64,000 bases of DNA from positions 248,001-312,000 of the IMG/VR virus record IMGVR_UViG_3300025121_000011, one strand, 5' to 3'. Below the pieces are notes generated by a model, which was not told the DNA's origin, ran no database searches, and was given only the letters and a program-made list of their open reading frames with translations. Both the position numbers and the translations under genes were made by a program. Below, piece after piece: positions 10,208 through 24,453 of the stretch. Every line of letters starts with the position of its first letter. Within the stretch, counting starts at the first letter, position 1.

Positions 10208-10429
10208 CACCGATTGCTCCCAACCCTTTATTCAACCCATATAAGTTAAGCTGATCCATGTCATGTATACCACGTCAAGTGACGGTGATCACAAAAGTAA
10301 AAAGAAAAGCGTGACGATTACTTTTTTAAATGTCAAGCAATGTTTTGTTGGTTTTAAAAAAAATAAACATAGTATGTGTTATCTTTAAAAAGATATTCTA
10401 TATAGTAACAAAGAAGAAAGGAGTAGCCC

Positions 10430-10741
10430 ATGAGGCGGTTTGTCTTGATAGATACCGAAATCACGGCAGAATGGAACGATGATATCTGGGATGATTTTCA
10501 CCTTGTATGGTCCATTCCGGAGGTTCCGGGGTTGTTTCAAGCTCTAAAAGCAGCTCTGAAAGAGGAGCCGAGTCCCATAACCCTTGTTGCAGGGGTTTTG
10601 GATACCCTAAGGCATCCCGAGGTTTGGAGGGTTTTGGAGGCTAAAACGAGTCATTCTGCTGCCTCGATTATCCTTGGTATCGGCCGTCAGGAGGTTCTTG
10701 CTGCTATAAACTGGTTGGAAGTTGATTCGGATCAACTGTAA
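10430..10741 (+). CDS. hypothetical cassette protein
   Basis: Follows header; AGGAG RBS. Confidence 0.6.
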   Translation: MRRFVLIDTEITAEWNDDIWDDFHLVWSIPEVPGLFQALKAALKEEPSPITLVAGVLDTLRHPEVWRVLEAKTSHSAASIILGIGRQEVLAAINWLEVDSDQL

Positions 10742-10919
10742 ATGGGTTTTTGGGGTAAATAGAGGTAGGTCCCTATAGGGTTAAAATACCTCTATTATAG
10801 GTTTATAGGTTGGCACGGAACCTGCATTAAGCAGATATCATGCCAAACAGGGTTTAAGGATAGAATAAGTTTACTCTAAAAAGATATCCTCTGGAGTAAC
10901 TAATGACTGAGAGGTAAAC

Positions 10920-11399
10920 ATGATTGCAACCAATCGTTCTATTCTTGACCTGTTTCGTACTGTGGCTAAACGATGGTGGTATTTCCAGGAGCTTCGTAAT
11001 TGCGGACGCGAATCCGAAGCACGACGACTGGAAAGGGATTCCGTTCTGGAGAAAGTCTCTTCTCTTCGGAAAGTCAATACTCGTGGTGTCGTGGTGATTC
11101 GCGATCTTGGCACCTGTGGATATCCCGGTGAGGCATGGTGGCAGTATGTTGACGGTAACTCCACTGTGACCACGACCGGTGGTAGTTGGGAGTTTGTTCA
11201 GGCGGCGTATCGTTACGGTTGTCTCATGGTGGACGTGTCGCACTTGACCGTCGGTCAAAGGCTTCGCCTTCCGAATCCCATGGGATATGCCGATGATGAT
11301 TGGCGGGAAGCATTGATGAAGTTTGTGAAAGAAGTCAAAATGGAGGGTGGGGTAGTGTTCAACGACAGAAACCTCTTCTGCGACGATTCCGATGTGTGA
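10920..11399 (+). CDS. hypothetical cassette protein
   Basis: Dyad, header and GAGG RBS upstream; hairpin terminator near 11486. Confidence 0.7.
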   Translation: MIATNRSILDLFRTVAKRWWYFQELRNCGRESEARRLERDSVLEKVSSLRKVNTRGVVVIRDLGTCGYPGEAWWQYVDGNSTVTTTGGSWEFVQAAYRYGCLMVDVSHLTVGQRLRLPNPMGYADDDWREALMKFVKEVKMEGGVVFNDRNLFCDDSDV

Positions 11400-11624
11400 A
11401 GACTCAAGGATGGTTGCATGGCGACGGTTTCAAGATGCAGCAATGCAGGCCCTTACTACCTGACAGACTGAACTCCGGAAGGAAGGGGGGCGCAAAGCGC
11501 CCCGCCTTTGTTTCTGTATCTGAGTTGGCATAGTTTTTGCTTAATGCAGTTATCGTGCCAATGCATACACACCGGTTACTCTAAAAAGATATCTTCTTAA
11601 GTAATAAAGAGTTGAGAGGTAAAC

Positions 11625-11975
11625 ATGGCTTCCTATAAGCAACTTTCTGCGCTTCCTGCACTTGCATACCTGAATCCAGAAAACTTCCGAACGGAGTATG
11701 ACAATCTGCCTGAAGACGATTACCGTGTTCGTCAGTATCAGAAAGGCAGAAAGTATGGAGAAGGAGGTACCACGCTGTATATCAGCGTTGAATCCGTTTG
11801 GAGTGTAGACGGATATAACGGGAATGGATTCGTTTCGTCTTCAGAAGGTATTGGCTACCATAGCTGTACCGCCGATCTACTAAGGGGGTTTCTCGACAGT
11901 GGGATTAAGATCGTCGTGATTCGTCGTTGCGAATACGGTGTAACTGAAACTGTAATCAAGGAGGGCAAGATATAA
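11625..11975 (+). CDS. hypothetical cassette protein
   Basis: Dyad, header and GAGG RBS upstream. Confidence 0.7.
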   Translation: MASYKQLSALPALAYLNPENFRTEYDNLPEDDYRVRQYQKGRKYGEGGTTLYISVESVWSVDGYNGNGFVSSSEGIGYHSCTADLLRGFLDSGIKIVVIRRCEYGVTETVIKEGKI

Positions 11976-12272
11976 TGTGGGCAACGTGGCCTAACGGCAG
12001 GGACGCCTTTTGTTTTGACACGATGGTTGGGTCCGCTGGTTGGACCTGGAGTAACATCTATCTGGTTGAAGTTTGGTTCCTGGGTATGACCGTAGTGTAT
12101 GGTAGCCGCTGGTATGCAGAGGCATAGACCAGAATAGAAGCGGGGTTATATCGTTTAATCCGTCGTGCTTTGGCATAGAACATGCATTAAGCAAAGACTG
12201 TGCCAAGTCGAACACCGGCGACAATAAGTTAACTCTAAAAAGATATCTTCCGAAGTAATAAAAAGATAAGAG

Positions 12273-12716
12273 GTGAATATGGAATCGAAAGTGCTTTTCG
12301 TTGCGCTGTGTCTCGACGACGAATCTCAGGCCAGCCTATCCAGGGTTGCGAGGTTTGAAGTATCCCATCCGAATCGGATCGTTCTGGCTTTTAATCCCGG
12401 GATGGATGTAGAAGGGGAATACTCCGGTCGATCGCGATTGGGTGAATGGTTTGAGATTCCGTTTGATCGGATGGCGGTAGGAAACGGCATTGAAGCGGTG
12501 AGCATTATCATGCCCGAGGGGCTTACCTGCTATGAGGAAGTGCCGCACGTCGTGGTTTCTCATAGGGTTGAGATCACAGAGGTATATTCATTCTACCTCT
12601 TTGATCCTGATCTGGCATATATTGTATCATCTCGCCCGTTCAAAGGATCTTGTCGTGCTCGCCTCGGATTCGTCATGGCAGATGGAACAACTCGGTTCCA
12701 TAACCCAACGGAATAA
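12273..12716 (+). CDS. possible degenerate 2H-phosphoesterase-fold protein
   Basis: FVALCLDDESQASL..HPNRIVLAF..IEAVSI..PHVVVS resembles the two-His layout of 2H enzymes; HxT motifs are degenerate. Confidence 0.35.
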   Translation: MNMESKVLFVALCLDDESQASLSRVARFEVSHPNRIVLAFNPGMDVEGEYSGRSRLGEWFEIPFDRMAVGNGIEAVSIIMPEGLTCYEEVPHVVVSHRVEITEVYSFYLFDPDLAYIVSSRPFKGSCRARLGFVMADGTTRFHNPTE

Positions 12717-12723
12717 ATAAAAA

Positions 12724-12751
12724 GAATGCCCCGATTTTAGTCGGGGCATTC
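12724..12751 (+). terminator. hairpin terminator
   Basis: GAATGCCCCGATTTTAGTCGGGGCATTC. Confidence 0.7.
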
Positions 12752-12758
12752 CGGTGTC

Positions 12759-12801
12759 TGCATTTATGGCGTTTGCATTTATGGCGTTTGCATTTATGGC
12801 A
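12759..12801. repeat. 15-bp tandem repeat, about 3 copies, abutting a dyad
   Basis: TGCATTTATGGCGTT repeated. Confidence 0.85.
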
Positions 12802-12904
12802 TGACTATTGCATTAAGCAAAGGGCATGCCAATATTAATGTCTGCGTCTATGCGGATAACTCTAAAAAGATATCTTCCGAAGTAATAAAGTAACAAAGGA
12901 GGAA

Positions 12905-13171
12905 ATGATGCTCACTTTCGTAAGCAAGCTCTCTACCCCGACGCGATATGTCGTCCTTTGCGGGGACAAGATCAGTATGATCAAGGCCGTTCGGTTGCTC
13001 ACAGGTTCTGGGTTGAAGGAGGCAAAAGATGCTGTTGAAGCCGAGAACCCGGACATGAGGGTTGGCTTTGATATCTTCATTGTAAAAGTCTACTATCAGG
13101 AGGCGCATGCACAAGAGATTCGTGATGTCGTCAATACGTTGACGCGGGTTGGTTTCGTGCTTCCTTATTAG
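12905..13171 (+). CDS. ribosomal protein bL12 C-terminal-domain-like protein
   Basis: DKISMIKAVRLLTGSGLKEAKDAVE matches the bL12 CTD consensus KIxVIKxVRxxTGLGLKEAKDxVE. Confidence 0.8.
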   Translation: MMLTFVSKLSTPTRYVVLCGDKISMIKAVRLLTGSGLKEAKDAVEAENPDMRVGFDIFIVKVYYQEAHAQEIRDVVNTLTRVGFVLPY

Positions 13172-13186
13172 CACGAAAGAACCAGG

Positions 13187-13215
13187 AAGCCCCGGCAGTT
13201 GTTTCGCCGGGGCTT
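13187..13215 (+). terminator. hairpin terminator (near-identical copy at about 15925-15953)
   Basis: AAGCCCCGGCAGTTGTTTCGCCGGGGCTT followed by a T-rich tract. Confidence 0.75.
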
Positions 13216-13342
13216 TCTTCTGTGTATCACTCTTGGCATATAACTTGCATTAAGCAAAGAGCGTGCCAAGTTAAGATATCGGTGGCAATAAGTTAACTCT
13301 AAAAAGATATTTTATGAAGTAATAAAGAGCTAAGAGGTAAAC

Positions 13343-13615
13343 ATGGATACACCCATTCCGTTTCCAGAGATTGCGAATCCGACGCCATTTCAAGTGAAGG
13401 GGGTAAACATCTGGTTTCTTCCGGGTGAGGATCATTTCATCGCAATGGTACATCTGTCTGTATCCGAGCGTGACTTGCGAACTTGGCACTGGCACAATAC
13501 AACCTCTTGCACCGGGAAGGATGAATGCAGTCGAGACGGTTTCTCATGGTATACCATGAGAAAAGAATCTGAAAAGGGAGAGGTGCTATACATGAGTAAT
13601 CACAAGGCGCTGTAA
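13343..13615 (+). CDS. hypothetical cassette protein
   Basis: Dyad, header and RBS upstream. Confidence 0.65.
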   Translation: MDTPIPFPEIANPTPFQVKGVNIWFLPGEDHFIAMVHLSVSERDLRTWHWHNTTSCTGKDECSRDGFSWYTMRKESEKGEVLYMSNHKAL

Positions 13616-13990
13616 CTCTAAAAAGATCTTCTCCAGAGTAAGAAAAGGACATAGGAGTCCAGAATGATTCGAAAGCATAGTGTCCGTGAAGTTGTAAAGG
13701 TCGCAGAAAGCGATTTCATGACGGAAGAGGAGAGGGCATATCGAAGTGATCGGTGGAGCCGGCGAAAGGGGAAGATGAAGGGGAAGGGGAAACAAGAGGA
13801 TCGCGGGAAAAACCGCGATTTTGATGAAGGGGGGTATTGAGAAGAGACGGGGAGGGGCACGGAAATCCGTGCCCTTCCTTTTGATATATAAGGTTGGCAT
13901 AGAACATGCATTAAGCAAAGACCGTGCCAACGTGTATACAGATAAGTCTAAAAATATATTCTTCGTAGTAACTAATCGACGGAGGTACCA

Positions 13991-14362
13991 ATGCGAACCA
14001 TTACGCGTATGTTTCTGATCCAGGGACTGTCAACCGTTGCCGGTGTCAGTGGTTGCACGATTCTGATCTCTGAGATTGCGTTCCTTGAGGGTATCGATCC
14101 GATGTCCCTGGTAATCCTGGCGATTACATCAATCGTATCTGGAGGGGCATCTATCATTCTGATCATGACGCTTCCCAAGGCTTCCAAGGTAGAAAGCTCC
14201 GCATATGTGGGCGAGGATACGGATGATATTGAAACGGAGGAGATGGCCGATCCTTATGCCTACTGGGATGCCTATGGTTCCGGAACCACTTACCCGGAAG
14301 ATCGGGAAGCTATCATCGGTCGCATCGGAAACAATGGAATCGTGGTACGATTCGGAAAGTAA
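13991..14362 (+). CDS. membrane protein with acidic C-terminal tail
   Basis: Two hydrophobic segments; GGAGG RBS. Confidence 0.65.
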   Translation: MRTITRMFLIQGLSTVAGVSGCTILISEIAFLEGIDPMSLVILAITSIVSGGASIILIMTLPKASKVESSAYVGEDTDDIETEEMADPYAYWDAYGSGTTYPEDREAIIGRIGNNGIVVRFGK

Positions 14363-14513
14363 TCTCAAGGGGCTTTGCCCTATTCAATGTGGCATAGAAC
14401 ATGCATTAAGCAAAGACTGTGCCAAGTCAAACACCGGCGGGAATAAGTTAACTCTAAAAAGATATCTTCCGAAGTAATGAATAGGTGTAAGGAAACAAAG
14501 CAAAGAGGCTCCT

Positions 14514-15197
14514 ATGAAAAGCGCTCACCACTCAAACGAGATCATTGATGAAATGATCGCTACCCGAAGGGAATCAAACCCGGAAGAAGTCTGGACACGA
14601 GATGTTCCCGCGATTCACCAGAATCGCATTCTCGGAAATAATGTCACCGTGGCGGCGGAAAGTGATGCGGGGCGTGGTGCTCCGGTTCTTGATCTCTATG
14701 GATTGGTTCCAATCTGTGGGGGAGCGATTACCGATGAAGTGCTGATCTCTGTCAAGAGTACGGAAGGAGCCGATCGGATCACGGGTAGAACCTGTGTGTT
14801 CACTACGGGAACTGAGAGGCACATCAGGGCGATTCTGGCGCAACTCATGAATCCTGACGTTTCAATCCCGGTGCTTTTCGTGCACCGAAACACCACGAAT
14901 GGTCAATGGGTACAGACGTCTTTCGATGCCTGCAAAGTGGTCCGGGCCTTGTATAATCTTCAGGGTGAGGGAGATTACTGCGAAGATTCTCCTGCGAAGT
15001 GGTCGACAGGAAAGCGGGGCGTTCCAATGGTGGTTCGTGTGCGAGAGCAGATCTATAAAGATACCGTCTATTACTATCACCAGATTCGGTTCAATATGGC
15101 TCCGCTGATCGCCATGGGTTTGGTGCCAGAATGGCGAAAGGTGAATAGCCCGACACTTGAGTTGGACGACGACACCGATACGATCGCGTCAATGTAG
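14514..15197 (+). CDS. hypothetical protein, possibly PD-(D/E)xK nuclease-like
   Basis: LDLYG...LISVKS could be a variant catalytic motif; weak. Confidence 0.45.
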   Translation: MKSAHHSNEIIDEMIATRRESNPEEVWTRDVPAIHQNRILGNNVTVAAESDAGRGAPVLDLYGLVPICGGAITDEVLISVKSTEGADRITGRTCVFTTGTERHIRAILAQLMNPDVSIPVLFVHRNTTNGQWVQTSFDACKVVRALYNLQGEGDYCEDSPAKWSTGKRGVPMVVRVREQIYKDTVYYYHQIRFNMAPLIAMGLVPEWRKVNSPTLELDDDTDTIASM

Positions 15198-15378
15198 AAT
15201 GTAGGTGTAAAGAAAGCCGTCCGGATGGGCGGCTTTTCGTTATTTCATAACTAATGTGGTATAAGTATTGCATTAAGCAAGTATCATGCCAACGCATGCA
15301 TCTGGATAACTCTAAAAATATTTTCTGTAGAGTAATAAAGAACTGTGAGTAACCATCGTCTGACATTCGGGAGGCATA

Positions 15379-15609
15379 ATGTTTGGAATCTACCGTCTGC
15401 ATTCAGGCCGACCCCGGCTGCATTACCGTGGAACACTTGAACATCTACTGGTAAAGTTGTGCGCCGATTCCATGTATGCAAATGCAGCGCCAATGACAAG
15501 AGCGCGTGCATGCGGTATCGAGGGGACGATCGATGAAGTTACCGCATTCTTTGCGGCGGGTGGGAAGCGGTGGGGTGGCGGAGCGTACTACCTTGTTCAA
15601 GAGGCTTAA
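15379..15609 (+). CDS. hypothetical cassette protein
   Basis: GGAGG RBS after header. Confidence 0.6.
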   Translation: MFGIYRLHSGRPRLHYRGTLEHLLVKLCADSMYANAAPMTRARACGIEGTIDEVTAFFAAGGKRWGGGAYYLVQEA

Positions 15610-15663
15610 AGGGTTCATCTCCAAAAATATATCGTCTTAAGTAATAAAGGAACACAGGAGAAG

Positions 15664-15909
15664 ATGATGCTCACTTTGCGATATTTCACCCTTCGCGGGG
15701 ACAAGATCAGCGTGATCAAGGCTGTTCGGTCGTTCACAGGTTTGGGCCTCAGGGAAGTAAAAGATGCTGTCGAAGATGCGAACCCGGGAAAAGTGATGGC
15801 GGATTATGATATCTTCACCATGAAACTTTATTATCCGAAGGAGCAAGAACAAGAGATTCGTAATGTCGCCTGTATGTTGATGGATGTAAGTTCCGTGTTT
15901 CCCCATTAG
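15664..15909 (+). CDS. bL12 C-terminal-domain-like protein (paralog of 12905-13171)
   Basis: DKISVIKAVRSFTGLGLREVKDAVE; downstream terminator also duplicated. Confidence 0.8.
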   Translation: MMLTLRYFTLRGDKISVIKAVRSFTGLGLREVKDAVEDANPGKVMADYDIFTMKLYYPKEQEQEIRNVACMLMDVSSVFPH

Positions 15910-16084
15910 CGCGAAAGAAATAGGAAGCCCCGGCGGTTGTTTCGCCGGGGTTTTTCTGTGTATCACTCTTGGCACATAACTTGCTTAATGCAAGTGTCAT
16001 GCCAGCATATAAATAAGTATCTTATGCCGTGGCGGCAAAAGAATCACAATAACTCTAAAAAGATATCCTCCGGAGTAACTAAGA

Positions 16085-16600
16085 GTTGCCAGCACAAAAC
16101 GAGTAAAAGAAGTAAACGAGGAAAAGAATAAGTACCCGCTGGTCTCTCAAATCTTAGTAACAAAAAGAGGTGCATATGCCTGGTTGATAAGGTTCTCACC
16201 TAATGTCGTCTAAAACTTTGGTTCCTTAAGTTGAGCGCGACTTCCGAGGCATCGGAAGGAAATACCGGCAAATAACGGTTCTATGGTCGCGCCAGGGGGC
16301 GGGCCACTAAAAGAATCGTTCGCGCTCAGTCGAGAATAAGCAGGTTAAAGATACTTTTGCGCCGCTCGACAACCTACTTCTGTCGATGAAATAACCCGCA
16401 CACCGCTTTTTACATAGCCGCAACGGAAGGGGCACACCTGTTAGCTTTGCATATCCTAATATTCCATAGGGATATGTGCGGGCTGGAATCAACAGGGAAG
16501 TGCGAACCCGGTCAAGGCAAAGAGACGGAAGCCTGTTAGGGTTGATAGAGAGAGATAGGAATAAGATGCCCAAGGAGACGCGCGCTCCTTGGGTTTCTTT
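16085..16600 (+). ncRNA. candidate structured ncRNA cassette
   Basis: Full dyad and header upstream, terminator at 16569-16593, no credible + strand ORF between them, several hairpins. Confidence 0.45.
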
Positions 16601-16777
16601 TTGTTTAAAAGTAGTTTGGCATGAGACTTGCATTAAGCAAAGGCCATGCCAATGTATATGCGTATGACTAATGAATGGATAGATATTGTGGCGGCAAAAG
16701 AATCACAATAACTCTAAAAAGATATCCTCTGGAGTAACTAAGGACTGTAAGAACCCTAACCACCAACGAGGTACCTC

Positions 16778-17266
16778 ATGCGCCCTATCAAGCTTTCTCG
16801 AATCGTCATTCGCAGTGCCACCGTCGTTCGCTCTTGGCTTGAACGATGGAACGATTCCGCCCGTTCCATCTGGGAAGCTCAGGTTCCTGAGGGCCTTCCT
16901 CCGCTGGTTGTTTGCGAGGTTACCGTTCCGGGGGCATCGAAGGATGATGCGGAGAACCCCAATAAGGGGAATGTGGTAATGCTGGTCCCGACGGAAGAAG
17001 TGGACGACATGATGGAGGAGTTGCTTTTGCAGGCCAACGAGGGTCGACCGGCCACGGCGGCGGAGGTTGTCCGGAAGACGGCCACTTGGATCGATATTGG
17101 AACCGAAGACGCACCGAATCTGATTTTTTCGTTCAAGGTTTCTGAGGCTCCTGGCAGTCGAACAATCAAGGTTGCCGAGAGTGATCTTCCCCTGTTCCTT
17201 ACCGGTCTCAATCTGAGGTTCAAGTCGTTGATTGTCCAGTGGAATGACGCCCATCCGGACAAGTAG
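16778..17266 (+). CDS. hypothetical cassette protein
   Basis: Dyad, header and GAGG RBS; purine tract and hairpin downstream. Confidence 0.7.
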   Translation: MRPIKLSRIVIRSATVVRSWLERWNDSARSIWEAQVPEGLPPLVVCEVTVPGASKDDAENPNKGNVVMLVPTEEVDDMMEELLLQANEGRPATAAEVVRKTATWIDIGTEDAPNLIFSFKVSEAPGSRTIKVAESDLPLFLTGLNLRFKSLIVQWNDAHPDK

Positions 17267-17510
17267 AGAAAGAAAGAAAGAAAGGAGGGAAGGGGCGCAT
17301 GCGCCCCTTCCCTTTAAACCTGTAGAATGAAGGGCGGATATATCCGTCCTTTTCGTGTATCTTTATTTTAGTTGGTATGGTTCTTGCATTAAGCATATAT
17401 CATGCCAACGCATATTATGTTAACACATACACATACCCATGGCGGCAAAAGATTTGCAGTATCTCTAAAAAGATATCTGCTGTAGTAACTAAGGGCTGTG
17501 AGAAACCACT

Positions 17511-17557
17511 AACAGAGTTACCCAACAGAGTTACCCAACAGAGTTACCCAACAGAGT
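17511..17557. repeat. 13-bp tandem repeat, about 3.6 copies
   Basis: AACAGAGTTACCC repeated. Confidence 0.9.
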
Positions 17558-17566
17558 GAGGTTCTT

Positions 17567-17791
17567 ATGGCTTTTTCTTTTGATGAATACAATAATCGTC
17601 CTTATACTTTCATCGCGGATCAAGATGAAGTAGATGACGATTGGTCAGACGACGATGATGATTGGAGCGAACCCTCTGAAAATGATATGTGGGAATCGTT
17701 CCCTGATGATGATGACGACTACACGACGAATGACCCTGACAACGACTATTACATAGAACCCGACTACACGGAATCCAATAAGGACTACTGA
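17567..17791 (+). CDS. very acidic small protein
   Basis: D/E-dominated 74-aa ORF with GAGG RBS. Confidence 0.6.
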   Translation: MAFSFDEYNNRPYTFIADQDEVDDDWSDDDDDWSEPSENDMWESFPDDDDDYTTNDPDNDYYIEPDYTESNKDY

Positions 17792-17829
17792 TAAGGAATA
17801 CTGAGGGATTGGACATCATTGGAGCGAGA

Positions 17830-18330
17830 TGTCATGATGGTTCGCTCTACCCATGCCCCTTAAGTGGGTGTTACCAACAAGGAGTTAGGAATGTATAAGA
17901 ATAAGAATAAGAATAACTCTGGACGGGATTTATCCTGTTCACCAGCAGGATAAGCTGCTGGGAGCAAAGTAGGCCGTGAGAGCTTTGGATACCTTCTGTC
18001 TGACAGCAGAGGGCAAACGAAAAAGCAAGCCGAAAAGCTTGGTGTGAGGGATGCGAAGACAGAGACCTGTCAGGTCTGGTCGTTCACCTAAAACCCTCCC
18101 TTGGTCCGCCGTGTGTGCAGATTAACTTAAGAATGCGTGTCCGGATACGCAAACTGAGACACTGATGCGCACATAGGGTAAGCGGGCCTATTTTAGTAAC
18201 TAAAACGGAGAAAGTTAAAACAAAAAAGGAAATAAGCGATTCTGCCCTGGGTCTGATACAGTGGGGTTCGTCACTTAGAAGGTTCATAACCTCTTGGACG
18301 ACAACGACTGCCAGACCCAGGGCGTTTCAT
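17830..18330 (+). ncRNA. candidate structured ncRNA
   Basis: About 500 nt without a credible + strand ORF; perfect 12-bp long-range stem 18244-18255/18312-18323 and multiple hairpins. Confidence 0.45.
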
Positions 18331-18477
18331 TGTTTAAAGATTACTTGGCATGAGACTTGCATTAAGCAAATGTCATGCCAACGCACGTATAAGCATTTTA
18401 TACTCTGGCGGCAAAAGAATAACATCATCTTTAAAAATATATTCTTTGTAGTAACTAACATCTGAAAGGAGGCTGAG

Positions 18478-19350
18478 ATGGCAATGATTTCCAAAGATGA
18501 AATGCTTGCGCGAGTAGTTGACCCTATTCTTGAGGCAATGAAAGAGGGAAAGCTGCTATGGCTTCAAGGATGGAATGTGGGTGCGGGTGCGGGTCTCCCT
18601 TATAACCCGACCAAAGCATCTAATAAGCAAGCGTATCGAGGTGCGGTCAATAACATCTTGATGTGGTTTGCGTCCGCTGCTAATGGTTGGGGCGACCCTC
18701 GTTGGATGGGTTTTGCTCAAGCGAAAACAAAAGGATGGCGAGTTCGGAAGGGGGAGGAGTCGACCCAAATCTATGCTCCAATCATGGGTTCGTATCCGAT
18801 TGAAGAGAACGGCCAAAAGGTTTGGAGAAAATATGTCAAGGGCTTCAACCCTGTTCATGTTTTCAATGCCCAACAGGTGGATGGAATCCCCGCGATTGAA
18901 AAGGCTGGAACCTTGGATGTCTCCACCGGATATGCTGCCGCAGAGGACATGTATAAGGCTATGAACGTGCAAACGATTCATGGCGGTAATGTGGCTGCAT
19001 ATGCATATCAGGTTGACATCATTAGGATGCCGGAACCAGAAATGTTTGTGGGCGCAGATGAATACCACGCTACGCGCTTGCATGAAATGGGGCATGCGAC
19101 GGGGCACCCGTCTCGCATGGATAGAAGGATGTTCGGAACAGGGTTACAGGATTACGCTCAGGAAGAGCTTGTAGCGGAGTTGTTTGCTGCTTTCGCATGT
19201 GCAGACATTGGCGTATCCAAAGCTGAAATGACGCAGAATCATGCAGCATACCTCAAAAGCTGGCATGAGCGTCTAAGCAGGGAACCAAAAGCATTCATAG
19301 ATGCCGTATCGGCAGCATGGGAAGCTTTTGAGTTTGTTCGAAAACTGTGA
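18478..19350 (+). CDS. ardC: ArdC-family antirestriction/ssDNA-binding protein with zincin-like domain
   Basis: LPYNP..YRG..N..WMGFAQAK..GWRVRKGE; YHATRLHEMGHATGHPSRMDR; YAQEELVAE. Confidence 0.9.
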   Translation: MAMISKDEMLARVVDPILEAMKEGKLLWLQGWNVGAGAGLPYNPTKASNKQAYRGAVNNILMWFASAANGWGDPRWMGFAQAKTKGWRVRKGEESTQIYAPIMGSYPIEENGQKVWRKYVKGFNPVHVFNAQQVDGIPAIEKAGTLDVSTGYAAAEDMYKAMNVQTIHGGNVAAYAYQVDIIRMPEPEMFVGADEYHATRLHEMGHATGHPSRMDRRMFGTGLQDYAQEELVAELFAAFACADIGVSKAEMTQNHAAYLKSWHERLSREPKAFIDAVSAAWEAFEFVRKL

Positions 19351-19645
19351 TAGAGATTAATCTGGCAAAGAAGAGACAAGCGAAGAAGCTTGTTTCTTGC
19401 GTGAGATATTTGCATATGCACGCTTTGGAGTTGGTTCTTTTGTTTTTGGTGATAATTGTTTCGATACTGTTTGTTATCACCAGTTTTTAATAAAATAACG
19501 AGGTGCAGGGTTTGAGTTGGCACAGTTTTTGCTTAATGCAGTTATCGTGCCAATGCATACACACTAGTTTACTCTAAACTAGTTTACTCTAAAAAGATAT
19601 CCTCTGGAGTAACTAATGATTGTAATCCGCTAAGGAGGTGTTTTA

Positions 19646-20080
19646 ATGGCAAAGTTTCTGATCGACTTCCGTGATCCACCGAACTCCCTGGTCAAGTGTG
19701 TCAAGGCTCTTAAGAAGATTTCCGGAATGAGTTATAGGAGAGCAAAGGACGCCGCGATACTTACTGATCCGATCGTTGTGGAGATTCCGATGTTCTCCGA
19801 GAACAACGAAATCTCCCAAGGGATGATTAGGACTTGGTTTGCAGAGGAAATCGGTTGGACTATCATGGTTGGAAGTCCCAAAATGCTTCCCGACCGAACA
19901 GGACTCTTCACAATGCACTTTCGGAACGGATCCCGGATGGATTCGGTAAGGATTGAAGTGTTCGAGTTGGTGAACGATGGTAGTAGACCTGAGATTGATC
20001 GTTATTTCTTTTCCTATAAGGGAGATAGCCGTATGCAGAGCTTTTACAGCACGACCGATGACCACTATCTGACGGATTGA
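19646..20080 (+). CDS. protein with divergent N-terminal bL12-CTD-like helix-turn-helix
   Basis: SLVKCVKALKKISGMSYRRAKDAA. Confidence 0.5.
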   Translation: MAKFLIDFRDPPNSLVKCVKALKKISGMSYRRAKDAAILTDPIVVEIPMFSENNEISQGMIRTWFAEEIGWTIMVGSPKMLPDRTGLFTMHFRNGSRMDSVRIEVFELVNDGSRPEIDRYFFSYKGDSRMQSFYSTTDDHYLTD

Positions 20081-20250
20081 TACCCGGAAGAGCGGGGGCG
20101 CTTTGCGCCCCCTGCTCTTGTTTATGTATCTGAGTTGGCACAGTTTTTGCTTAATGCAGTTATCGTGCCAACGCATATATAGGCGGCAAAAGATTAACAG
20201 CATCTTTAAAAATATATTCTTTCGAGTAACTAATAGTTGAAAGGTAAATA

Positions 20251-21120
20251 GTGTGGTGTTCAACAACAGAAACCTTTTTGAATATACTAAGGTGTGAAGA
20301 TTTAAGGATGGATAACCTCAATAGGAGTAACTCAATGTCCAGTTCGTCTTTCGTCACGCTTATGTCTGTTGTTATCGACCCCGCTGATCTACCTGCCCTT
20401 TTTACCGAGTTGGAGGACACTGCTGATCGTGTATGGTTGTCCCGGACCTGTGTTTGTGACCGATACACAATTAGGGGCGTGCCAGCAAGGAGGGTCGATG
20501 TTGTAATCGAGAACCGTTTGTCGACGACTAACCTTGCTGAGATTGATCCTTGCGAACGAATTGTAATGTCGGTCGTGGAAAAGGCCGGGCGCTTCGATGG
20601 TGCCATTCGTTGGCGTCTGACAGTTCGTGTCGTGCGTAGCATGGACCTTGTGATCCGCGGTGCCGATGGGTGCGTAATCAATCCGATTCCCGGTGGCCGT
20701 CTTGATGTTGAGTTGACATCAAATGGTAAGTATGGGAGTGTTCGCGTGACTCTATCTGACGGTACCGGCATTCGGTGGGATCAGAGTTTCGTTCGTCTTC
20801 GCTCTGACCTCGGTGATTACAGTCCTGCTCGGCTTGTGATGTGGCATGCCAGGAGATACTATGGTTTTCTTTTAGCCTCTGATGAGGGCTATCAGGAAGT
20901 GGTTGCCCTTGCTGATTCTTGGAAGATTCCAGGAGAGGCGTCCACACTTGCGGAAGCGAATCGGGCTGCATCTCGTGAACTGTACCGTCTTGCCCGTAAT
21001 GGTGGATGGCGAAAGCTTACACTTAGGGAACGGACAAAGCTCGGTCTTTATGGTGAGGCACAGTGGATTCCTGAGAAGATCTATGCCCGCGCGCAGATGG
21101 AACATCGGATGGTAAGATAG
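20251..21120 (+). CDS. hypothetical cassette protein (true start may be downstream)
   Basis: 289-aa ORF after dyad and header; hairpin downstream. Confidence 0.65.
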   Translation: MWCSTTETFLNILRCEDLRMDNLNRSNSMSSSSFVTLMSVVIDPADLPALFTELEDTADRVWLSRTCVCDRYTIRGVPARRVDVVIENRLSTTNLAEIDPCERIVMSVVEKAGRFDGAIRWRLTVRVVRSMDLVIRGADGCVINPIPGGRLDVELTSNGKYGSVRVTLSDGTGIRWDQSFVRLRSDLGDYSPARLVMWHARRYYGFLLASDEGYQEVVALADSWKIPGEASTLAEANRAASRELYRLARNGGWRKLTLRERTKLGLYGEAQWIPEKIYARAQMEHRMVR

Positions 21121-21316
21121 CGGTAAAAGAGCAGGGAAGAAACGGGCCTCTTCCGGCCTGTTTCATTTATATGTCCATGTTGGCACAGTTTTTGCTTAAT
21201 GCAGTTATCGTGCCAATGCATACACAGGCGGCAAAAGATTAACAGCATCTTTAAAAATATATTCTTTCGAGTAATATAAGTCTGTAAGCATCTACACACT
21301 CAAGGGGAGAATACTG

Positions 21317-21505
21317 ATGAAATACTCTGTCTACTCCAGATCAGCGAGGTGGTGGAATGGCAAAAAGTGGGTAACCACTATGGAGGCGCTTAGCTTGCCG
21401 AAGAATGGTCAACTTTCTTCTGAGCGAGTATTTAAGACGCAAAAAGCGGCTCTTGCTGCGATCACATGTGAAGATCTTGATATTAGGATTACCAACCAAG
21501 GATAA
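21317..21505 (+). CDS. small basic hypothetical protein
   Basis: GGGGAG RBS after header. Confidence 0.55.
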   Translation: MKYSVYSRSARWWNGKKWVTTMEALSLPKNGQLSSERVFKTQKAALAAITCEDLDIRITNQG

Positions 21506-21507
21506 AC

Positions 21508-21708
21508 ATGCCCACACACACCACCTGCATAGAACTGATTCGTCGTCCGCATGAAGTGAATGTTCGTCCATGTGGTGGAACGATGCGAGAGTCGAGTGCG
21601 ATGATTCCAATCTATGCATCAAATCATAGAGGACATTGTATGCGACCAATCACATACAAACGAAAGACTGTATGGAAGTGTGTTCGATGTGGTCATAGTA
21701 TCGGATGA
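21508..21708 (+). CDS. small Cys/His-containing protein
   Basis: CVRCGH motif. Confidence 0.5.
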   Translation: MPTHTTCIELIRRPHEVNVRPCGGTMRESSAMIPIYASNHRGHCMRPITYKRKTVWKCVRCGHSIG

Positions 21709-21804
21709 TTCGCCGAAAGGCGGCAAAAAGTTAACTTCTCCTCTAAAAATATATTTTCCAAAGTAACTAAGGGCTGTAAGAAATCTTCAAACAGAGGGGC
21801 ACAC

Positions 21805-22107
21805 ATGCTCTGTCAATATCTGGTTCTCGATCCAGAAAACAACGATGCCACGATTGGAATGGTAAGTGAAGCAGAAATCTGGATTGTGCGGAATGAATAT
21901 GATATGTATCACACAGGCATCGCCTTGATTGATAGTGAAGTTCGGGAACGCGTAAGCGTGCAGGAACTTATTAAAGTGTGCGAGTCTTTGATTGCTTCTT
22001 TTAAAAAGACTTCAAACAATAGGGTGTCAGGATTAACACAAATGAGGGATTTTGTTGGTGATTTCAACCATCTGGCTGAACTGATGAATAAGTTGAAAGT
22101 TCTTTAG
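21805..22107 (+). CDS. hypothetical cassette protein
   Basis: Header and GAGGGG RBS. Confidence 0.65.
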   Translation: MLCQYLVLDPENNDATIGMVSEAEIWIVRNEYDMYHTGIALIDSEVRERVSVQELIKVCESLIASFKKTSNNRVSGLTQMRDFVGDFNHLAELMNKLKVL

Positions 22108-22176
22108 CCAACATTCGTATAACTTTTGATAAACTCTACAACCAAATCCATAACCCAACCAAACCAATAATCAGAG

Positions 22177-22491
22177 GTGATAATGATTTCTCGACGCATG
22201 GTTCGAAGTCTTTCTCTTAGTCAGGCTGAGAATGTTTACAATGTCTTTGCTGATCGAGCGGACGAACTGCGCTCAGATGCATTTGATGCGATTTCGGCCA
22301 TCAAGACTCCTGCTGGTATCAATGGATATACATTGATGGAACTTGTTGACATCGCTCGCGATATGAAGCAAATGGAGCAGGCATCTGAGCGTGTGGGTAC
22401 CGTTATCGACAACTGGGATACCGGTGGGATGCCTCCTCGCGATCCGAAGGGCAAGATGTCGAAGGAGCTTCAGAGTGAGCCTATCTGGTAA
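22177..22491 (+). CDS. hypothetical protein with NWDTGG motif
   Basis: Shares NWDTGGxPPR with 23093-23467. Confidence 0.65.
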   Translation: MIMISRRMVRSLSLSQAENVYNVFADRADELRSDAFDAISAIKTPAGINGYTLMELVDIARDMKQMEQASERVGTVIDNWDTGGMPPRDPKGKMSKELQSEPIW

Positions 22492-22494
22492 TAG

Positions 22495-22940
22495 AAAGTC
22501 GAGTGTATATACGATCGCGAAGGCTTAATGAAATGGTCGTGCTCGTAAATAGGATGTGCTTCAACTGTCAACATTAAACCTCCTATCTTTTCCGACTTAA
22601 AATAAGAATAACCGCTAATGGACCCCGTTAGTTCCGCACATAGGAGCGAGGGGAAGTGTTGAAAAAGTTAGCGGGTAAGAGCATTGATAAATCTGCTTGA
22701 AAGTAGCTGCCCTGAGAACACCGCGGGAAACAACCGCACCCATAAACATGGGAACGATGCGAACAACGATGCGGACAGGCAAGTAGATTATCATAAGCTC
22801 CCATCATCTTGTTAAGCGAAAAGTGGACCGGATGTGTAGATGGACGGGCACATAGAGTGTAGCCTCTTGATTTACCGGAAGCTTGTACAAGTATTAGGTT
22901 AAACTCTGAGAAGGCGGATGCTAATGTATCCGCTTTCTTC
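22495..22940 (+). ncRNA. candidate structured ncRNA
   Basis: About 440 nt ORF-free; 10-bp stem 22690-22699/22780-22789; terminator hairpin 22911-22936. Confidence 0.4.
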
Positions 22941-23092
22941 CTTATTTGTATTTTGGCACGATTTTTGCATTATGCAGTTCTTGTGCCAATGCATATGCTG
23001 GCGGCAAAAAGTTAACTTCTCCTCTAAAAATATATTTCCCAAAGTAATTAAGGGCTGTAAGATTCCTAAGAAAACAAAAGTAGGAGGATCAA

Positions 23093-23467
23093 ATGATTAC
23101 TCGGGCAATGCTTCTCGCTCTTCCTCGCCCTGTTGTTCAGACTCTTGGGGACCAGGTTAGTGTAGCGATTGACGGTGTGCAGACAAAAGCATTTGAAAAT
23201 CTGGTTTCGATCACCGGCAAATCTTCACATGATATCACCGCGGATGATCTCATTGCGCTGGCGGCTGCTGGAACTAAGCTTCGCACGCTTACACAAGCCG
23301 ATGAAAGGCTTAGTCTGCTTCTTGGCAACTGGGATACGGGCGGTCGTCCACCTCGAACGCATGGTGATGATATGACAGACGACCCCTCATGGGAAGGCGA
23401 CCCTGAGACGTTCTCGTCGCAGCCAGTAGACTACGAAGGCGAGTGGAGGGCAGGAGTGTGGCGATGA
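23093..23467 (+). CDS. hypothetical protein with NWDTGG motif
   Basis: GGAGG RBS; NWDTGGRPPR. Confidence 0.7.
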   Translation: MITRAMLLALPRPVVQTLGDQVSVAIDGVQTKAFENLVSITGKSSHDITADDLIALAAAGTKLRTLTQADERLSLLLGNWDTGGRPPRTHGDDMTDDPSWEGDPETFSSQPVDYEGEWRAGVWR

Positions 23468-23767
23468 AGACAAATCGAGACGACAGCCAGAGCGATTACA
23501 ACTATGATAGCAGACATGATAGCCGACGCCGACGGACGACGGAGGCGACGACGGCAGCACGACGACAGCGACAGGCCGAAAGAGAGGCGGACGATCGCCG
23601 GACGCTGGTCTTGATGATCGGACAGGAGAGATTTGACTCAGATATGGTCTCTACTGTAGAAAAGTAGTGGGAGTGTGCGTGCTAATGAATGAGTACACAG
23701 TGTTTGTTCAGTTTGTAGATGGATAAATCCCGGCGCCCGAACCGTATGCCGGGCAGAAGGAGTAGAT

Positions 23768-24259: not shown

Positions 24260-24453
24260 GGAGAAAACATACAAGTGTTCACTCATCGACTCTGGCGGTA
24301 AAAACATTACATGTATATGCATTGGCATAGTTTTTGCTTAATGCATGTATTGTGCCACCACGATTCCAAACACCGCCTGGCGGCAAAAGATTTACTATAA
24401 CTCTAAAAATATATTCTTTGCAGTAACTAAGGATTACATACAAACATCAAGAG

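What the first reader, a model, noticed from the sequence alone, without database searches (positions are those of the whole stretch)
11486..21275. Identical headers carry different cargo, and dyad centres occur in both orientations: signs of cassette shuffling
Seen: near-identical header blocks precede unrelated cargoes (12170-12260 vs 14389-14477; 16028-16085 vs 16687-16745; 20135-20230 vs 21180-21275). The dyad core is GCATTAAGC in 10 copies and its reverse complement GCTTAATGC in 7. At 13170-13250 vs 15908-15985 the upstream terminator and left arm are shared, but the centre is flipped and the right arm differs. The terminator loop at about 11490 (GCGCAAAGCGC) is inverted at about 20098 (GCGCTTTGCGC). 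Inference: cassettes are exchanged by recombination at or near the dyad, in an integron-like way but without attC sites. Hairpin-loop micro-inversion by template switching is a simpler explanation for the flips.
Basis: partly seen in the sequence, partly recalled or inferred. Interest (0 to 1): 0.6.

Follow-up and report, generated by a model that had tools for sequence, protein, structure and literature searches.

The report
Shuffled gene cassettes with sigma-54-like palindromes
A giant groundwater phage carries a 25-kb island of about 30 small gene cassettes, each with the same terminator, 35-bp palindrome and promoter-like module; the modules recombine with each other, and the palindrome looks like two inverted binding sites for the bacterial sigma-54 factor, a form found in many phages but almost never in bacteria.

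Summary
The observations hold. Near-identical regulatory blocks (85/91, 55/59, 92/96 nt) precede unrelated genes. The dyad centre occurs in both orientations (10 and 7 copies). One terminator loop is inverted.

The region lies in a GC-rich island (44-48% GC; the genome is 33%) of a complete 335-kb jumbo phage. The island holds about 30 plus-strand cassettes. Each is framed by an intrinsic terminator, a 35-bp palindrome, and a promoter-like header plus ribosome-binding site.

Module types assort independently. One cassette is duplicated and one gene is truncated behind a header. In five related islands, single cassettes sit in permuted order on a conserved backbone. So shuffling is supported.

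It is not integron-like. The phage has no tyrosine or serine recombinase, and the dyad shows no hairpin covariation. It does encode RecA/UvsX-like and SbcC-like proteins. The closest known system is the PeSL promoter-terminator cassette of T4-type phages.

Each dyad half matches the RpoN (sigma-54) -24/-12 consensus, TGGCAYR-N4-TTGCW. The strict palindrome occurs in at least 119 viral stretches but only 4 in 596 Gb of bacterial genomes. What binds it, its function and the host are unknown.

The parts
10300..35000 (+). GC-rich accessory island (44-48% GC in a 33% GC genome). It holds all dyads but the last (36869-36903) and all headers, and the finding lies inside it.
10384..10416 (+). First header of the island, with no dyad; it marks the left edge.
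10809..10907 (+). Unit: dyad 10811-10845 (centre ATTAA) and header 10875-10907.
11487..11612 (+). Unit: terminator 11487-11503 (loop AAA), dyad 11526-11560 (TTAAT), header 11580-11612.
12169..12266 (+). Unit: dyad 12171-12205 (ATTAA) and header 12234-12266. Near-identical to the unit at 14390.
12723..12893 (+). Unit: terminator 12723-12752, dyad 12797-12831 (ATTAA), header 12861-12893.
12860..13257 (+). Duplicated cassette, copy 1: header, L7/L12-CTD-like gene 12905-13171, terminator, left half of the dyad.
13187..13330 (+). Unit: terminator 13187-13215, dyad 13234-13268 (ATTAA), header 13298-13330.
13617..13649 (+). Header without a dyad, starting at the stop codon of the upstream gene.
13853..13979 (+). 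Unit: hairpin, dyad 13895-13929 (ATTAA), header 13947-13979.
14388..14485 (+). Unit: dyad 14390-14424 (ATTAA) and header 14453-14485.
14514..15197 (+). Cargo gene c (227 aa), present in all six islands. The predicted fold resembles PD-(D/E)XK nucleases; this is a lead only.
15212..15343 (+). Unit: terminator 15212-15237, dyad 15257-15291 (ATTAA; arm TGGTA), header 15311-15343.
15619..15993 (+). Duplicated cassette, copy 2: header 15620 (no dyad upstream), L7/L12-CTD-like gene 15664-15909, terminator 15928-15950, left half of dyad 15970.
15970..16086 (+). Dyad 15970-16004 (TTAAT; its left arm matches 13234 but the centre is flipped), GGCGGCAAAAG box, header 16054-16086.
16085..16600 (+). Cargo with no ORF: about 500 nt, structured (z -2.8), ending in terminator 16568-16594. 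Candidate non-coding RNA.
16617..16745 (+). Unit: dyad 16617-16651 (ATTAA), GGCGGCAAAAG box, header 16713-16745.
16778..17266 (+). Cargo gene d (162 aa), present in all six islands, at a different position relative to c and ArdC in each.
17286..17496 (+). Unit: terminator 17286-17313, dyad 17373-17407 (ATTAA; arm TGGTA), header 17464-17496.
18346..18462 (+). Unit: dyad 18346-18380 (ATTAA), GGCGGCAAAAG box, header 18430-18462.
18478..19350 (+). Cargo: ArdC-like anti-restriction protein (ArdcN plus zincin peptidase domains), shared by four islands.
19516..19620 (+). Unit: dyad 19518-19552 (TTAAT) and header 19588-19620. The dyad is identical to 21181 and the header is identical to 10875.
20094..20237 (+). 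Unit: terminator 20094-20112 (loop TTT), dyad 20136-20170 (TTAAT), header 20205-20237.
20252..20313 (+). Remnant of the 3' end of a paralogue of gene 10920-11399 (about 80% identical to 11357-11419), joined directly to a header.
21139..21282 (+). Unit: terminator 21139-21164, dyad 21181-21215 (TTAAT), header 21250-21282.
21742..21774 (+). Header without a dyad.
22908..23055 (+). Unit: terminator 22908-22939, dyad 22954-22988 (ATTAT), header 23023-23055.
24321..24434 (+). Unit: dyad 24323-24357 (TTAAT) and header 24402-24434.
25380..25412 (+). Header without a dyad.
26417..26519 (+). Unit: dyad 26419-26453 (TTAAT) and header 26487-26519.
27616..27648 (+). Header without a dyad.
28557..28718 (+). 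Unit: terminator 28557-28586, dyad 28598-28632 (ATTAT), header 28686-28718.
30696..30728 (+). Header without a dyad.
31764..31990 (+). Degenerate dyad 31764-31798 and two headers, at 31855 and 31958.
32832..32864 (+). Header without a dyad.
34579..34611 (+). Last header, without a dyad.
36869..36903 (.). Outlying degenerate dyad CGGCA...TGCCG: both outermost bases are changed symmetrically. No header follows.

Best explanation
The finding lies inside a roughly 25-kb hyperplastic accessory island of a 335-kb groundwater jumbo myovirus. The island consists of about 30 small expression cassettes, all on the plus strand.

Each cassette is framed by a composite regulatory module:
1. an intrinsic terminator;
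2. a 35-bp palindrome made of two inverted half-sites, TGGCAYR-N4-TTGCW, which is the RpoN (sigma-54) -24/-12 consensus;
3. often a GGCGGCAAAA box;
4. a promoter-like header, TCTAAAAAKATAT-N7-AGTAAY;
5. a Shine-Dalgarno site, most often about 35 nt after the start of the header.

The modules are repeated 20-30 times in one orientation. They therefore serve as short homologies for the phage's general recombination machinery (RecA/UvsX-like, SbcC-like). Gene conversion keeps neighbouring modules near-identical, and unequal or ectopic exchange between modules duplicates, deletes, truncates and permutes single cassettes. This is why identical headers carry unrelated cargo. It is the mechanism described for PeSL promoter-terminator cassettes in T4-type phages, not a site-specific integron-type reaction.

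Orientation differences of the dyad, and of one terminator loop, are inversions of near-palindromic elements. Such inversions cost nothing functionally, because the element reads almost the same on both strands.

Status of the steps.
- Shown: the architecture, its statistics, the mosaic of modules, the duplication, the gene remnant, and the non-collinear order in relatives.
- Inferred: the island is expressed early, the header is a promoter, homologous recombination is the mechanism, and the dyad is bound by host sigma-54 holoenzyme. I put the last of these at about 0.5.
For: Architecture and statistics.
- 21 dyads and about 30 headers are confined to the GC-rich island, and all headers are on the plus strand.
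- Terminator-like hairpins are enriched, 28 against 17.2 expected, and sit just upstream of dyads.
- A Shine-Dalgarno site lies 34-36 nt after the header start in 14 of 30 units.

Recombination.
- Repeats are limited to intergenic modules of 45-160 bp, apart from one 401-bp cassette duplication.
- Module identities are discordant. Examples: 11526 vs 19518 gives terminator 45, dyad 98, header 85; 10811 vs 19518 gives dyad 75, header 100; 16617 vs 18346 gives dyad 90, header 76; 18346 vs 20136 gives dyad 75, header 91.
- A gene remnant sits behind a header.
- Dyad and header subtypes cluster by position along the island.

Relatives.
- Five other islands share the architecture: L146, L148, and three contigs from the metagenome scan, one of them from Tara Oceans.
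- They share cargo c, d, ArdC, e, f, h-m on a conserved backbone, with single dyad-flanked cassettes permuted and many unique cassettes.

Machinery.
- RecA-like and SbcC-like genes are present.
- No tyrosine or serine recombinase is present.

Dyad identity.
- Both halves score 9-12 of 12 against TGGCACG-N4-TTGCW in the window, and average 10-11.6 across 79 dyads of relatives.
- Among hits to a pattern that fixed only TGGCA, TGC, GCA and TGCCA, the free positions follow the sigma-54 consensus: Y 88%, R 85%, T 60%, W 82%. Such hits lie outside long ORFs.
- The half-sites look like the ChIP-mapped E. coli sigma-54 sites listed in PMC4591121.
- There is no excess complementarity at the free mirrored positions, so the element is two sequence-specific half-sites rather than a hairpin.

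Known precedent: the PeSL mechanism (PMC2839356 and PMC4122927).
Against: - No closely related genome (70-95% nucleotide identity) was available, so breakpoints could not be mapped to the base. The permutations rest on protein matches of 30-55% identity, and some could be paralogues.
- The phage population itself is invariant: 100% identity in at least 24 contigs. No ongoing rearrangement is seen, although contigs hide rare variants.
- The header does not fit the canonical sigma-70 consensus (29 sites found against 32.5 expected), so its promoter function is an inference.
- For sigma-54: the host is unknown. No bEBP activator and no RpoN domain are encoded in this phage or in 47 other dyad-bearing records.
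- The palindromic form is absent from bacteria.
- Two of the four bacterial-collection hits are binned with lineages that I recall as lacking rpoN (Saccharibacteria, Acidimicrobiales). I did not check this, and binning of short contigs is unreliable.
Confidence: 0.65

Rival explanations
1. The dyad is the operator of a phage-encoded dimeric DNA-binding protein, acting as an activator or as an early-gene shut-off factor. Its likeness to sigma-54 boxes is coincidental. The cassette-shuffling picture is unchanged; only the dyad's reader differs.
For: - The strict palindrome is nearly absent from bacterial genomes and common in phages.
- No bEBP is present in any of 47 dyad-bearing records.
- 18 of those 47 records, including all the jumbo ones, encode a small sigma-70-family factor, and this phage's own factor is homologous to some of them.
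- The distance from dyad to header varies from 35 to 79 nt.
Against: - No protein family is a universal neighbour of the dyads.
- 5 of 9 complete dyad-bearing records lack a sigma-70-family factor.
- The same bipartite half-site, including its four degenerate positions, is kept across phages of 36-60% GC and very different sizes. A universal host protein explains that more easily than a drifting phage regulator.
- The -24/-12 spacing and the YR, T and W preferences are exactly those of RpoN sites.
Confidence: 0.3
2. Integron-like or homing-like exchange: a dedicated enzyme cuts or recombines at the dyad and moves cassettes precisely. One candidate is the conserved island protein c, whose model resembles PD-(D/E)XK nucleases.
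For: - Gene c is present in all six islands.
- Its best structural matches are PD-(D/E)XK nucleases, including the homing endonuclease I-Ssp6803I at Z 7.4.
- One duplication ends at the dyad centre, and several shared blocks begin at the dyad's left edge.
Against: - There is no tyrosine or serine recombinase.
- Z values are below 8 and sequence identity is about 10%, so the fold assignment is only a lead.
- Dyads occur in many phages without gene c.
- Breakpoints also fall at header edges and between terminator and dyad.
- Every cassette has its own promoter-like header, unlike integron cassettes.
- There is no attC-like folded-strand covariation.
Confidence: 0.08
3. There is no shuffling. The blocks are alike only because selection keeps promoters and operators at their consensus, and the order is inherited vertically.
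For: - The phage is clonal and collinear in every assembly found.
- A backbone order (i-j-k-l-m, and roughly c/d/ArdC before e/f) is conserved among relatives.
Against: - Identity extends through non-consensus spacer positions: 92/96 and 85/91 nt including spacers that differ in other units.
- All four dyad/header combinations exist.
- A cassette is duplicated and a gene remnant is present.
- Single cassettes are permuted among relatives, and most cargo is not shared.
Confidence: 0.07
4. The dyad acts as a folded nucleic-acid structure: an RNA hairpin for processing or termination, or an extruded DNA hairpin promoter of the phage N4 kind.
For: - The element is a dyad with 6-7 bp outer arms and a 4-bp inner stem.
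- One copy (36869) changes both outermost bases symmetrically.
Against: - At the free mirrored positions, Watson-Crick complementarity is at or below chance in the window, in L146 and in 126 viral sites.
- Position 6 is Y and position 30 is R whether or not they can pair.
- True intrinsic terminators already sit just upstream.
- No T7/N4-type or multisubunit RNA polymerase gene was detected, although the T7-type search had no positive control.
Confidence: 0.04

Closest known systems
PeSL (promoter-early stem-loop) regulatory cassettes of T4-type phages (Arbiol et al. 2010, PMC2839356; Comeau et al. 2014, PMC4122927)
   Same: - Short composite promoter-plus-terminator motifs are repeated tens of times.
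- They are concentrated in hyperplastic regions, directly upstream of small ORFan genes.
- They serve as homologies for recombination that inserts, deletes and swaps single genes between related phages.
- The phage has its own homologous-recombination genes.
   Different: - The promoter part does not match the sigma-70 consensus.
- The terminator is separate from the promoter rather than interleaved with it.
- A third element, the 35-bp sigma-54-like palindrome, lies between them; PeSLs have nothing like it.
- The island has a far higher GC content than the rest of the genome.
- Mini-circles were not tested here.
Integron gene cassettes with attC sites and an IntI integrase
   Same: An array of single-gene units, all in one orientation, each bounded by an imperfect palindrome. 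Cargo is variable and its order differs between relatives.
   Different: - There is no IntI or other tyrosine recombinase.
- Each unit has its own promoter-like header and terminator.
- The palindrome is 35 bp with sequence-specific half-sites and no folded-strand covariation.
Bacterial RpoN (sigma-54) -24/-12 promoters (consensus and ChIP-mapped sites in PMC4591121)
   Same: Each half of the dyad is TGGCAYR-N4-TTGCW. The GG and GC are 10 nt apart, and the secondary preferences are the same as in RpoN promoters.
   Different: - Two sites are fused head to head, 3 bp apart, into a palindrome. That arrangement is almost absent from 596 Gb of bacterial genomes.
- No activator (bEBP) gene or upstream activator site was identified.
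- A second, promoter-like element follows 35-80 nt downstream.
Minute inversions at hairpins by intramolecular template switching or recombination in short inverted repeats (described for chloroplast non-coding DNA; cited from my own knowledge)
   Same: The loop or centre is inverted between otherwise homologous copies: terminator 11487 vs 20094, and dyad 13234 vs 15970.
   Different: Most dyad orientation differences here involve the arms as well and follow position along the island. They mark lineages of modules rather than frequent flips.

Membership tests
PeSL-type mobile regulatory cassettes | A composite of an early promoter and a stem-loop terminator in one short intergenic motif | tested here: inconclusive
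   Terminator hairpins are present and enriched. A conserved promoter-like header is present but does not fit the sigma-70 consensus, and no transcription data could be obtained.
PeSL-type mobile regulatory cassettes | Repeated many times, concentrated in a hyperplastic region, upstream of small genes of unknown function | tested here: met
   About 30 headers and 21 dyads occur only in the 25-kb island. The cargo is mostly small ORFs with no Pfam match.
PeSL-type mobile regulatory cassettes | Insertions, deletions, replacements and permutations between related phages are bounded by the motifs | tested here: met
   Single dyad-flanked cassettes are permuted among six islands, and most cargo is unshared. 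Within the genome the modules form a mosaic and one cassette is duplicated. This was resolved at the level of genes and modules, not individual bases.
PeSL-type mobile regulatory cassettes | Excised mini-circles formed by exchange between neighbouring motifs | not testable with these tools
Assembled contigs show no variant.
Integron | An IntI-type tyrosine recombinase next to or serving the array | tested here: not met
   PF00589 has no match in the complete 335-kb genome, and PF00239 has none either.
Integron | attC sites that act as folded single strands (conserved pairing with a variable sequence) | tested here: not met
   No excess complementarity at the free mirrored positions. Conservation lies in the sequence blocks instead.
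Integron | Promoterless cassettes expressed from one common promoter | tested here: not met
   Each unit has its own header and terminator.
RpoN (sigma-54) dependent promoter | -24 GG and -12 GC elements with the consensus TGGCACG-N4-TTGCW | tested here: met
   Both halves of every dyad score 9-12 of 12, and 79 dyads in relatives average 10-11.6. The free positions follow the consensus in 134 unique sites from other viral contigs.
RpoN (sigma-54) dependent promoter | A host that encodes sigma-54 | not testable with these tools
   The host is unknown (groundwater metagenomes). The phage itself has no RpoN domain.
RpoN (sigma-54) dependent promoter | A cognate AAA+ enhancer-binding activator | tested here: not met
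   No PF00158 match above the cut-off in this phage (the only weak hit is a generic AAA protein) or in 47 other dyad-bearing viral records. A host activator cannot be excluded.
RpoN (sigma-54) dependent promoter | Transcription starting about 12 nt downstream of the GC element | not testable with these tools
   No RNA data could be reached.

The most novel reading that the evidence does not exclude
The 35-bp palindrome is an undescribed, phage-specific class of regulatory element: two RpoN-type -24/-12 boxes fused head to head. Many unrelated phages, from 40-kb genomes to jumbo phages and from groundwater to the ocean, would use it to capture host sigma-54 RNA polymerase at the start of small accessory genes. 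It would act as an activator-independent or orientation-independent promoter, as an insulator or roadblock behind terminators, or as a sink for the host factor, all without a phage-encoded activator. In this phage lineage it has been built into the recombining regulatory cassettes that shuffle accessory genes.
Probability: 0.35. Interest if true: 0.85.

Novelty: new variant of a known kind. Interest (0 to 1): 0.62.

Why it matters
- It extends modular shuffling through repeated regulatory cassettes, so far documented in T4-type phages, to an unrelated lineage of jumbo phages found in groundwater and marine samples. It also gives a concrete unit of exchange for anti-defence and host-takeover genes: an ArdC-like protein, L7/L12-like proteins, a nuclease-like protein and two candidate non-coding RNAs.
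- The cassettes contain a palindrome that looks like a double sigma-54 site. It is common in phages and almost absent from bacteria. I found no report of sigma-54-type promoters as a general phage device in the paper searches I ran.
It would also offer a compact, orientation-independent part for synthetic biology.

Tried and rejected
Searches for relatives that found nothing useful
- A megablast of the region against 50,697 phage records found no match.
- The search for related loci with ArdC and with a flanking 408-aa protein gave one distant hit and none.
- The word-based protein search with gene d found only the protein itself.

Identical copies
- Exact-protein look-up found the same phage at 100% identity in at least 24 contigs. 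The one apparent length difference, in L141, is a run of N left by scaffolding, not a variant.

Reads

Genes sought in the phage
- Sigma-54 DNA-binding domain, bEBP, T7-type RNA polymerase and the RNA polymerase beta subunit were not found. The T7-type search had no positive control.

RNA families
- Rfam gave only tRNAs at the gathering threshold and nothing credible for the two ORF-free cargo stretches.

Other checks
- One genome search used a pattern with the wrong spacing and is void.
- Gene c was not found in five other jumbo records that carry dyads.
- A k-mer scan of intergenic DNA outside the island found no comparable repeated promoter.
- Reading the dyad or the header as a sigma-70, ECF, MotA-box or archaeal TATA type promoter by eye gave no consistent register, so I make no claim. 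In the relatives the GGCGGYAAAA-N2-TTGACA box sits at a variable distance from the A-rich box.
- About a quarter of the loose-pattern viral hits are chance matches inside long ORFs (tail-fibre-like and capsid genes, and the L002 repeat array). They were set aside.
- The large protein-representative search, complex prediction and alternative genetic codes were not used.

Full report
**Where the window lies**

The window is bases 248,001-312,000 of a single-contig, 335,169-bp IMG/VR virus record with direct terminal repeats, rated complete.
- PHROG matches identify a tailed jumbo phage: large terminase with an intein-like insert, portal, tail sheath, baseplate wedge, DNA polymerase and an SbcC-like nuclease.
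- Almost all genes are on the plus strand.
- The genome is about 33% GC, but window 10.3-35 kb is 44-48% GC. The finding lies inside this island.
- The same phage, at 100% identity, occurs in at least 24 contigs from groundwater metagenomes.

**Checking the observation**

- The three header pairs share 85/91, 55/59 and 92/96 nt, and the genes behind them are unrelated.
- GCATTAAGC occurs 10 times. GCTTAATGC occurs 8 times, 7 of them in dyads.
- The whole dyad, TGGCA-N7-TGC-N5-GCA-N7-TGCCA, has 20 matches at up to 1 mismatch against none in 100 shuffles. All 21 genomic copies lie in the island, apart from one degenerate copy just beyond its right edge.
- The pair 13170-13250 / 15908-15985 shares the terminator and left arm and has an inverted centre.
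- The terminators at 11487 and 20094 have the same stem with AAA and TTT loops.

**Anatomy**

A header, TCTAAAAAKATAT-N7-AGTAAY, occurs about 30 times, only on the plus strand and only in the island. In 14 of the 30 units a Shine-Dalgarno site lies 34-36 nt after the header start.
- Twenty of the headers are preceded by a dyad whose centre lies 35-79 nt upstream (177 nt for the second header that follows dyad 31764).
- Nine or ten headers have no dyad, and two of those begin at the stop codon of the upstream gene.
- Many headers, from 15970 onward, are preceded by a GGCGGCAAAAG box.
- Strong intrinsic-terminator hairpins lie 15-45 nt upstream of most dyads. Terminator-like sites number 28 against 17.2 expected.

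The unit is therefore: terminator, dyad, optional box, header, ribosome-binding site, then one or two small genes.

Cargo includes:
- an ArdC-like anti-restriction protein;
- two L7/L12-C-terminal-domain-like paralogues;
- many ORFs without any family match;
- two ORF-free, structured stretches of about 500 nt.

**Is the dyad a hairpin?**

No. In the window, in a related island and in 126 sites from other viral contigs, Watson-Crick complementarity at the unconstrained mirrored positions is at or below chance. Position 6 is a pyrimidine and its mirror position 30 is a purine whether or not the two can pair. The element is two sequence-specific half-sites in inverted orientation, which is the signature of protein binding.

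**What the half-site looks like**

Each half reads TGGCAYR-N4-TTGCW. This is the RpoN (sigma-54) -24/-12 consensus with its GG and GC 10 nt apart.
- The halves score 9-12 of 12 in the window.
- They are of the same form as the ChIP-mapped E. coli sites in PMC4591121, for example TTGGCACAGTTACTGCA.

- In the 134 unique sites the unfixed positions follow the sigma-54 preferences: Y 88%, R 85%, T 60%, W 82%.
- The 108 hits with YR in both halves lie in short open frames, like the intergenic dyads here. The other 36 lie in long ORFs and are chance coding matches.

The strict palindrome TGGCAYR-N4-TTGC-N5-GCAA-N4-YRTGCCA again reached the limit of 119 viral stretches. It has only 4 stretches in 596 Gb of bacterial and archaeal genomes.

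In other large phage records the dyads are likewise clustered in one small region. There too they follow terminators and precede a motif specific to that phage.

**Limits on the sigma-54 reading**
- No bEBP activator and no RpoN domain are encoded here or in 47 other dyad-bearing records.
- A small sigma-70-family factor is present in 18 of the 47, and this phage has two. However, 5 of 9 complete records lack one.
- No protein family is a constant neighbour of the dyads.

I therefore consider host sigma-54 the most economical reader, at about 0.5, and a phage-encoded dimeric regulator the main alternative, at about 0.3. The host is unknown.

**Evidence for recombination among modules**

A self-comparison of the island finds repeats only in the intergenic modules, plus one 401-bp, 74% identical duplication. 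That duplication runs from a header through an L7/L12-like gene and its terminator to the centre of the next dyad.

Module by module, identities are discordant.

| Units compared | Terminator | Dyad | Header |
|---|---|---|---|
| 11526 vs 19518 | 45% | 98% | 85% |
| 10811 vs 19518 | 50% | 75% | 100% |
| 16617 vs 18346 | 66% | 90% | 76% |
| 18346 vs 20136 | 64% | 75% | 91% |
| 19518 vs 20136 | 50% | 98% | 79% |

- All four combinations of two dyad types and two header types exist, which requires exchange between the dyad and the header.
- Blocks such as 12171/14390 and 20136/21181 share dyad, spacer and header (87-98% per module) but neither the terminator upstream nor the leader downstream.
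- About 62 nt of the 3' end of a paralogue of gene 10920-11399 lie directly behind the header at 20205. This is a scar of an illegitimate or ectopic exchange.
- Dyad and header subtypes follow position along the island: ATTAA dyads and ...AAAAAGATAT headers on the left, TTAAT dyads and ...AAAAATATAT headers in the middle...AAAAAAATAT headers on the right. Concerted evolution between neighbours predicts this pattern.

**Relatives**

Close relatives are not available; the collections return either the identical phage or nothing. More distant islands were found in two ways:
- through homologues of cargo gene c (L146/L147 and L148/L149);
- through a metagenome scan for a dyad followed by GGCGGYAAAA. 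This gave three contigs of 23-28 kb, one of them from Tara Oceans.

All have the same architecture: terminator, sigma-54-like palindrome, GGCGGYAAAA box, A-rich box, GTAA box, ribosome-binding site. Their 79 dyads score 10-11.6 of 12 on both halves.

Genes c and d occur in all six islands. ArdC, e and f each occur in four, and h to m in three or four. The table gives their order; the relatives' labels follow (A = L146; B = L148; C = L235, L246, L248; D = L236, L245).

| Island | Order of shared genes |
|---|---|
| This window | c-d-ArdC-e-f-h-i-j-k-l-m |
| A | d-c-e-f-k |
| B | c-b-d (this window has b before c) |
| C | c-ArdC-d; f-e-h-i; j-k-l-m (three separate pieces) |
| D | c-ArdC-d-h-e-f; i-j-k-l-m (two separate pieces) |

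In these relatives c, ArdC and d each directly follow their own dyad and header. Most other cargo is unique to one island. So there is a conserved backbone on which single cassettes have been moved, gained and lost. The caveat is that it rests on protein matches of 30-55% identity.

**Mechanism**

The phage has no tyrosine or serine recombinase. It does have a RecA/UvsX-like protein and an SbcC-like nuclease.

The closest described system is the PeSL of T4-type phages. PeSLs are repeated early-promoter/stem-loop motifs in hyperplastic regions, and homologous recombination between them inserts, deletes and replaces ORFan genes and can release mini-circles (PMC2839356, PMC4122927).

The present cassettes work like PeSLs but differ in three respects:
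- the promoter type differs, with no sigma-70 consensus;
- the terminator is separate from the promoter;
- a palindrome has been added between them.

An integron-type mechanism fails three of its defining features (see the membership test).

A speculative third possibility is that the conserved protein c initiates exchange. Its AlphaFold model (pLDDT 76) matches only PD-(D/E)XK nucleases, with best Z 7.4 to a homing endonuclease. The structural scores are marginal, and dyads exist in phages without gene c.

**The orientation flips**
- The half that ends in TGCT carries a T-rich spacer and the half that ends in TGCA an A-rich spacer, on whichever strand they lie. In general, therefore, the whole 35-bp element is inverted, not just its centre.
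- The dyad at 15970 is the exception: it shares its left arm with 13234 but has the centre reversed. That fits a minute inversion between the 4-bp inner repeats, or an exchange at the centre.
- The terminator pair 11487/20094 is a perfect-stem hairpin with an inverted loop.
- In the relatives one polarity dominates: centre ATA[CG]T 29 times against 5 for its inverse. Polarity is therefore either mildly selected or simply inherited. In this phage the ratio is 12 to 8.
- Because both halves satisfy the same consensus, an inversion should be nearly neutral.

**What could not be done**
Excised circles, rare rearrangements and transcript ends remain untested.
- Only genetic code 11 was used.
- The large protein-representative search was not used.

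**Verdict**

The cassette-shuffling inference is supported in the PeSL sense (homologous recombination between repeated regulatory modules), not in the integron sense. The most unusual component is the phage-specific, sigma-54-like palindrome, whose reader and function are open.

Noticed in passing
window 10300-35000: A 25-kb island of 44-48% GC inside a 33% GC jumbo phage genome, with its own promoter-like and terminator signals. The related islands found in other contigs are 48-60% GC. This suggests a gene pool with its own composition that is shared between phages.
   Followed up: partly
window 16085-16600 and 17795-18335: Two cassettes carry no ORF. Each is about 500 nt of structured sequence (folding z -2.8 and -3.7) ending in a terminator, with no Rfam match. 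They are candidate phage non-coding RNAs expressed from the same headers as the protein cassettes.
   Followed up: partly
window 14514-15197: A 227-aa protein conserved in all six islands. Its model (pLDDT 76) matches only PD-(D/E)XK nucleases (I-Ssp6803I, the SPARDA nuclease domain, DpnI, Hjc; Z 6.5-7.4), and its homologues conserve E-S-D, D-L-Y-G and S-V-K motifs.
   Followed up: partly
window 12905-13171, 15664-15909 (possibly also 19646-20080): Small phage proteins (81-88 aa) that match the ribosomal protein L7/L12 C-terminal domain. This domain contacts translation GTPases, so they may interfere with host translation.
   Followed up: no
window 17510-17556: Four tandem copies of a 13-nt unit (CAACAGAGTTACC) in the leader of the acidic 74-aa gene at 17567-17791. 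Several assemblies break or are N-scaffolded at this point.
   Followed up: partly
window 12757-12800: Three tandem copies of TGCATTTATGGCGTT directly upstream of the dyad at 12797, the last copy running into the dyad's first bases. Seen only by reading the sequence.
   Followed up: no
window 49195-55804: An RNA-repair cluster downstream of the island: a radical SAM protein, an RNA ligase, a Hen1-like protein (N-terminal domain match) and a Pnkp-type ligase domain. A Fe/Mn superoxide dismutase-like gene lies at 6030-6728.
   Followed up: no
window 30224-30308, 33158-33233, 33343-33413: tRNA-Leu(TAA) and tRNA-Lys(TTT) genes inside the island. A third tRNA-like match was reported only by Rfam (36 bits).
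   Followed up: no
G000 87366-90239 (locus L126:9366-12239): The large terminase ORF is 957 aa and carries LAGLIDADG homing-endonuclease and helicase-like matches in its N-terminal half, which suggests an intein or an inserted mobile element.
   Followed up: no
loci L049, L072, L093, L106, L190, L191: In several smaller viral contigs two strict sigma-54-like palindromes sit exactly 43 bp apart, start to start. This looks like a paired operator or promoter arrangement, unlike the one-per-gene layout here.
   Followed up: no
loci L235, L246, L248 (also L146): In the relatives the GGCGGTAAAAG box continues into a TTGACA-like hexamer at a variable distance (5-15 nt) from the A-rich box. Similar boxes (CCTACAAAAG...) also occur upstream of some dyads. 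This is an extra repeated element of unknown role.
   Followed up: no
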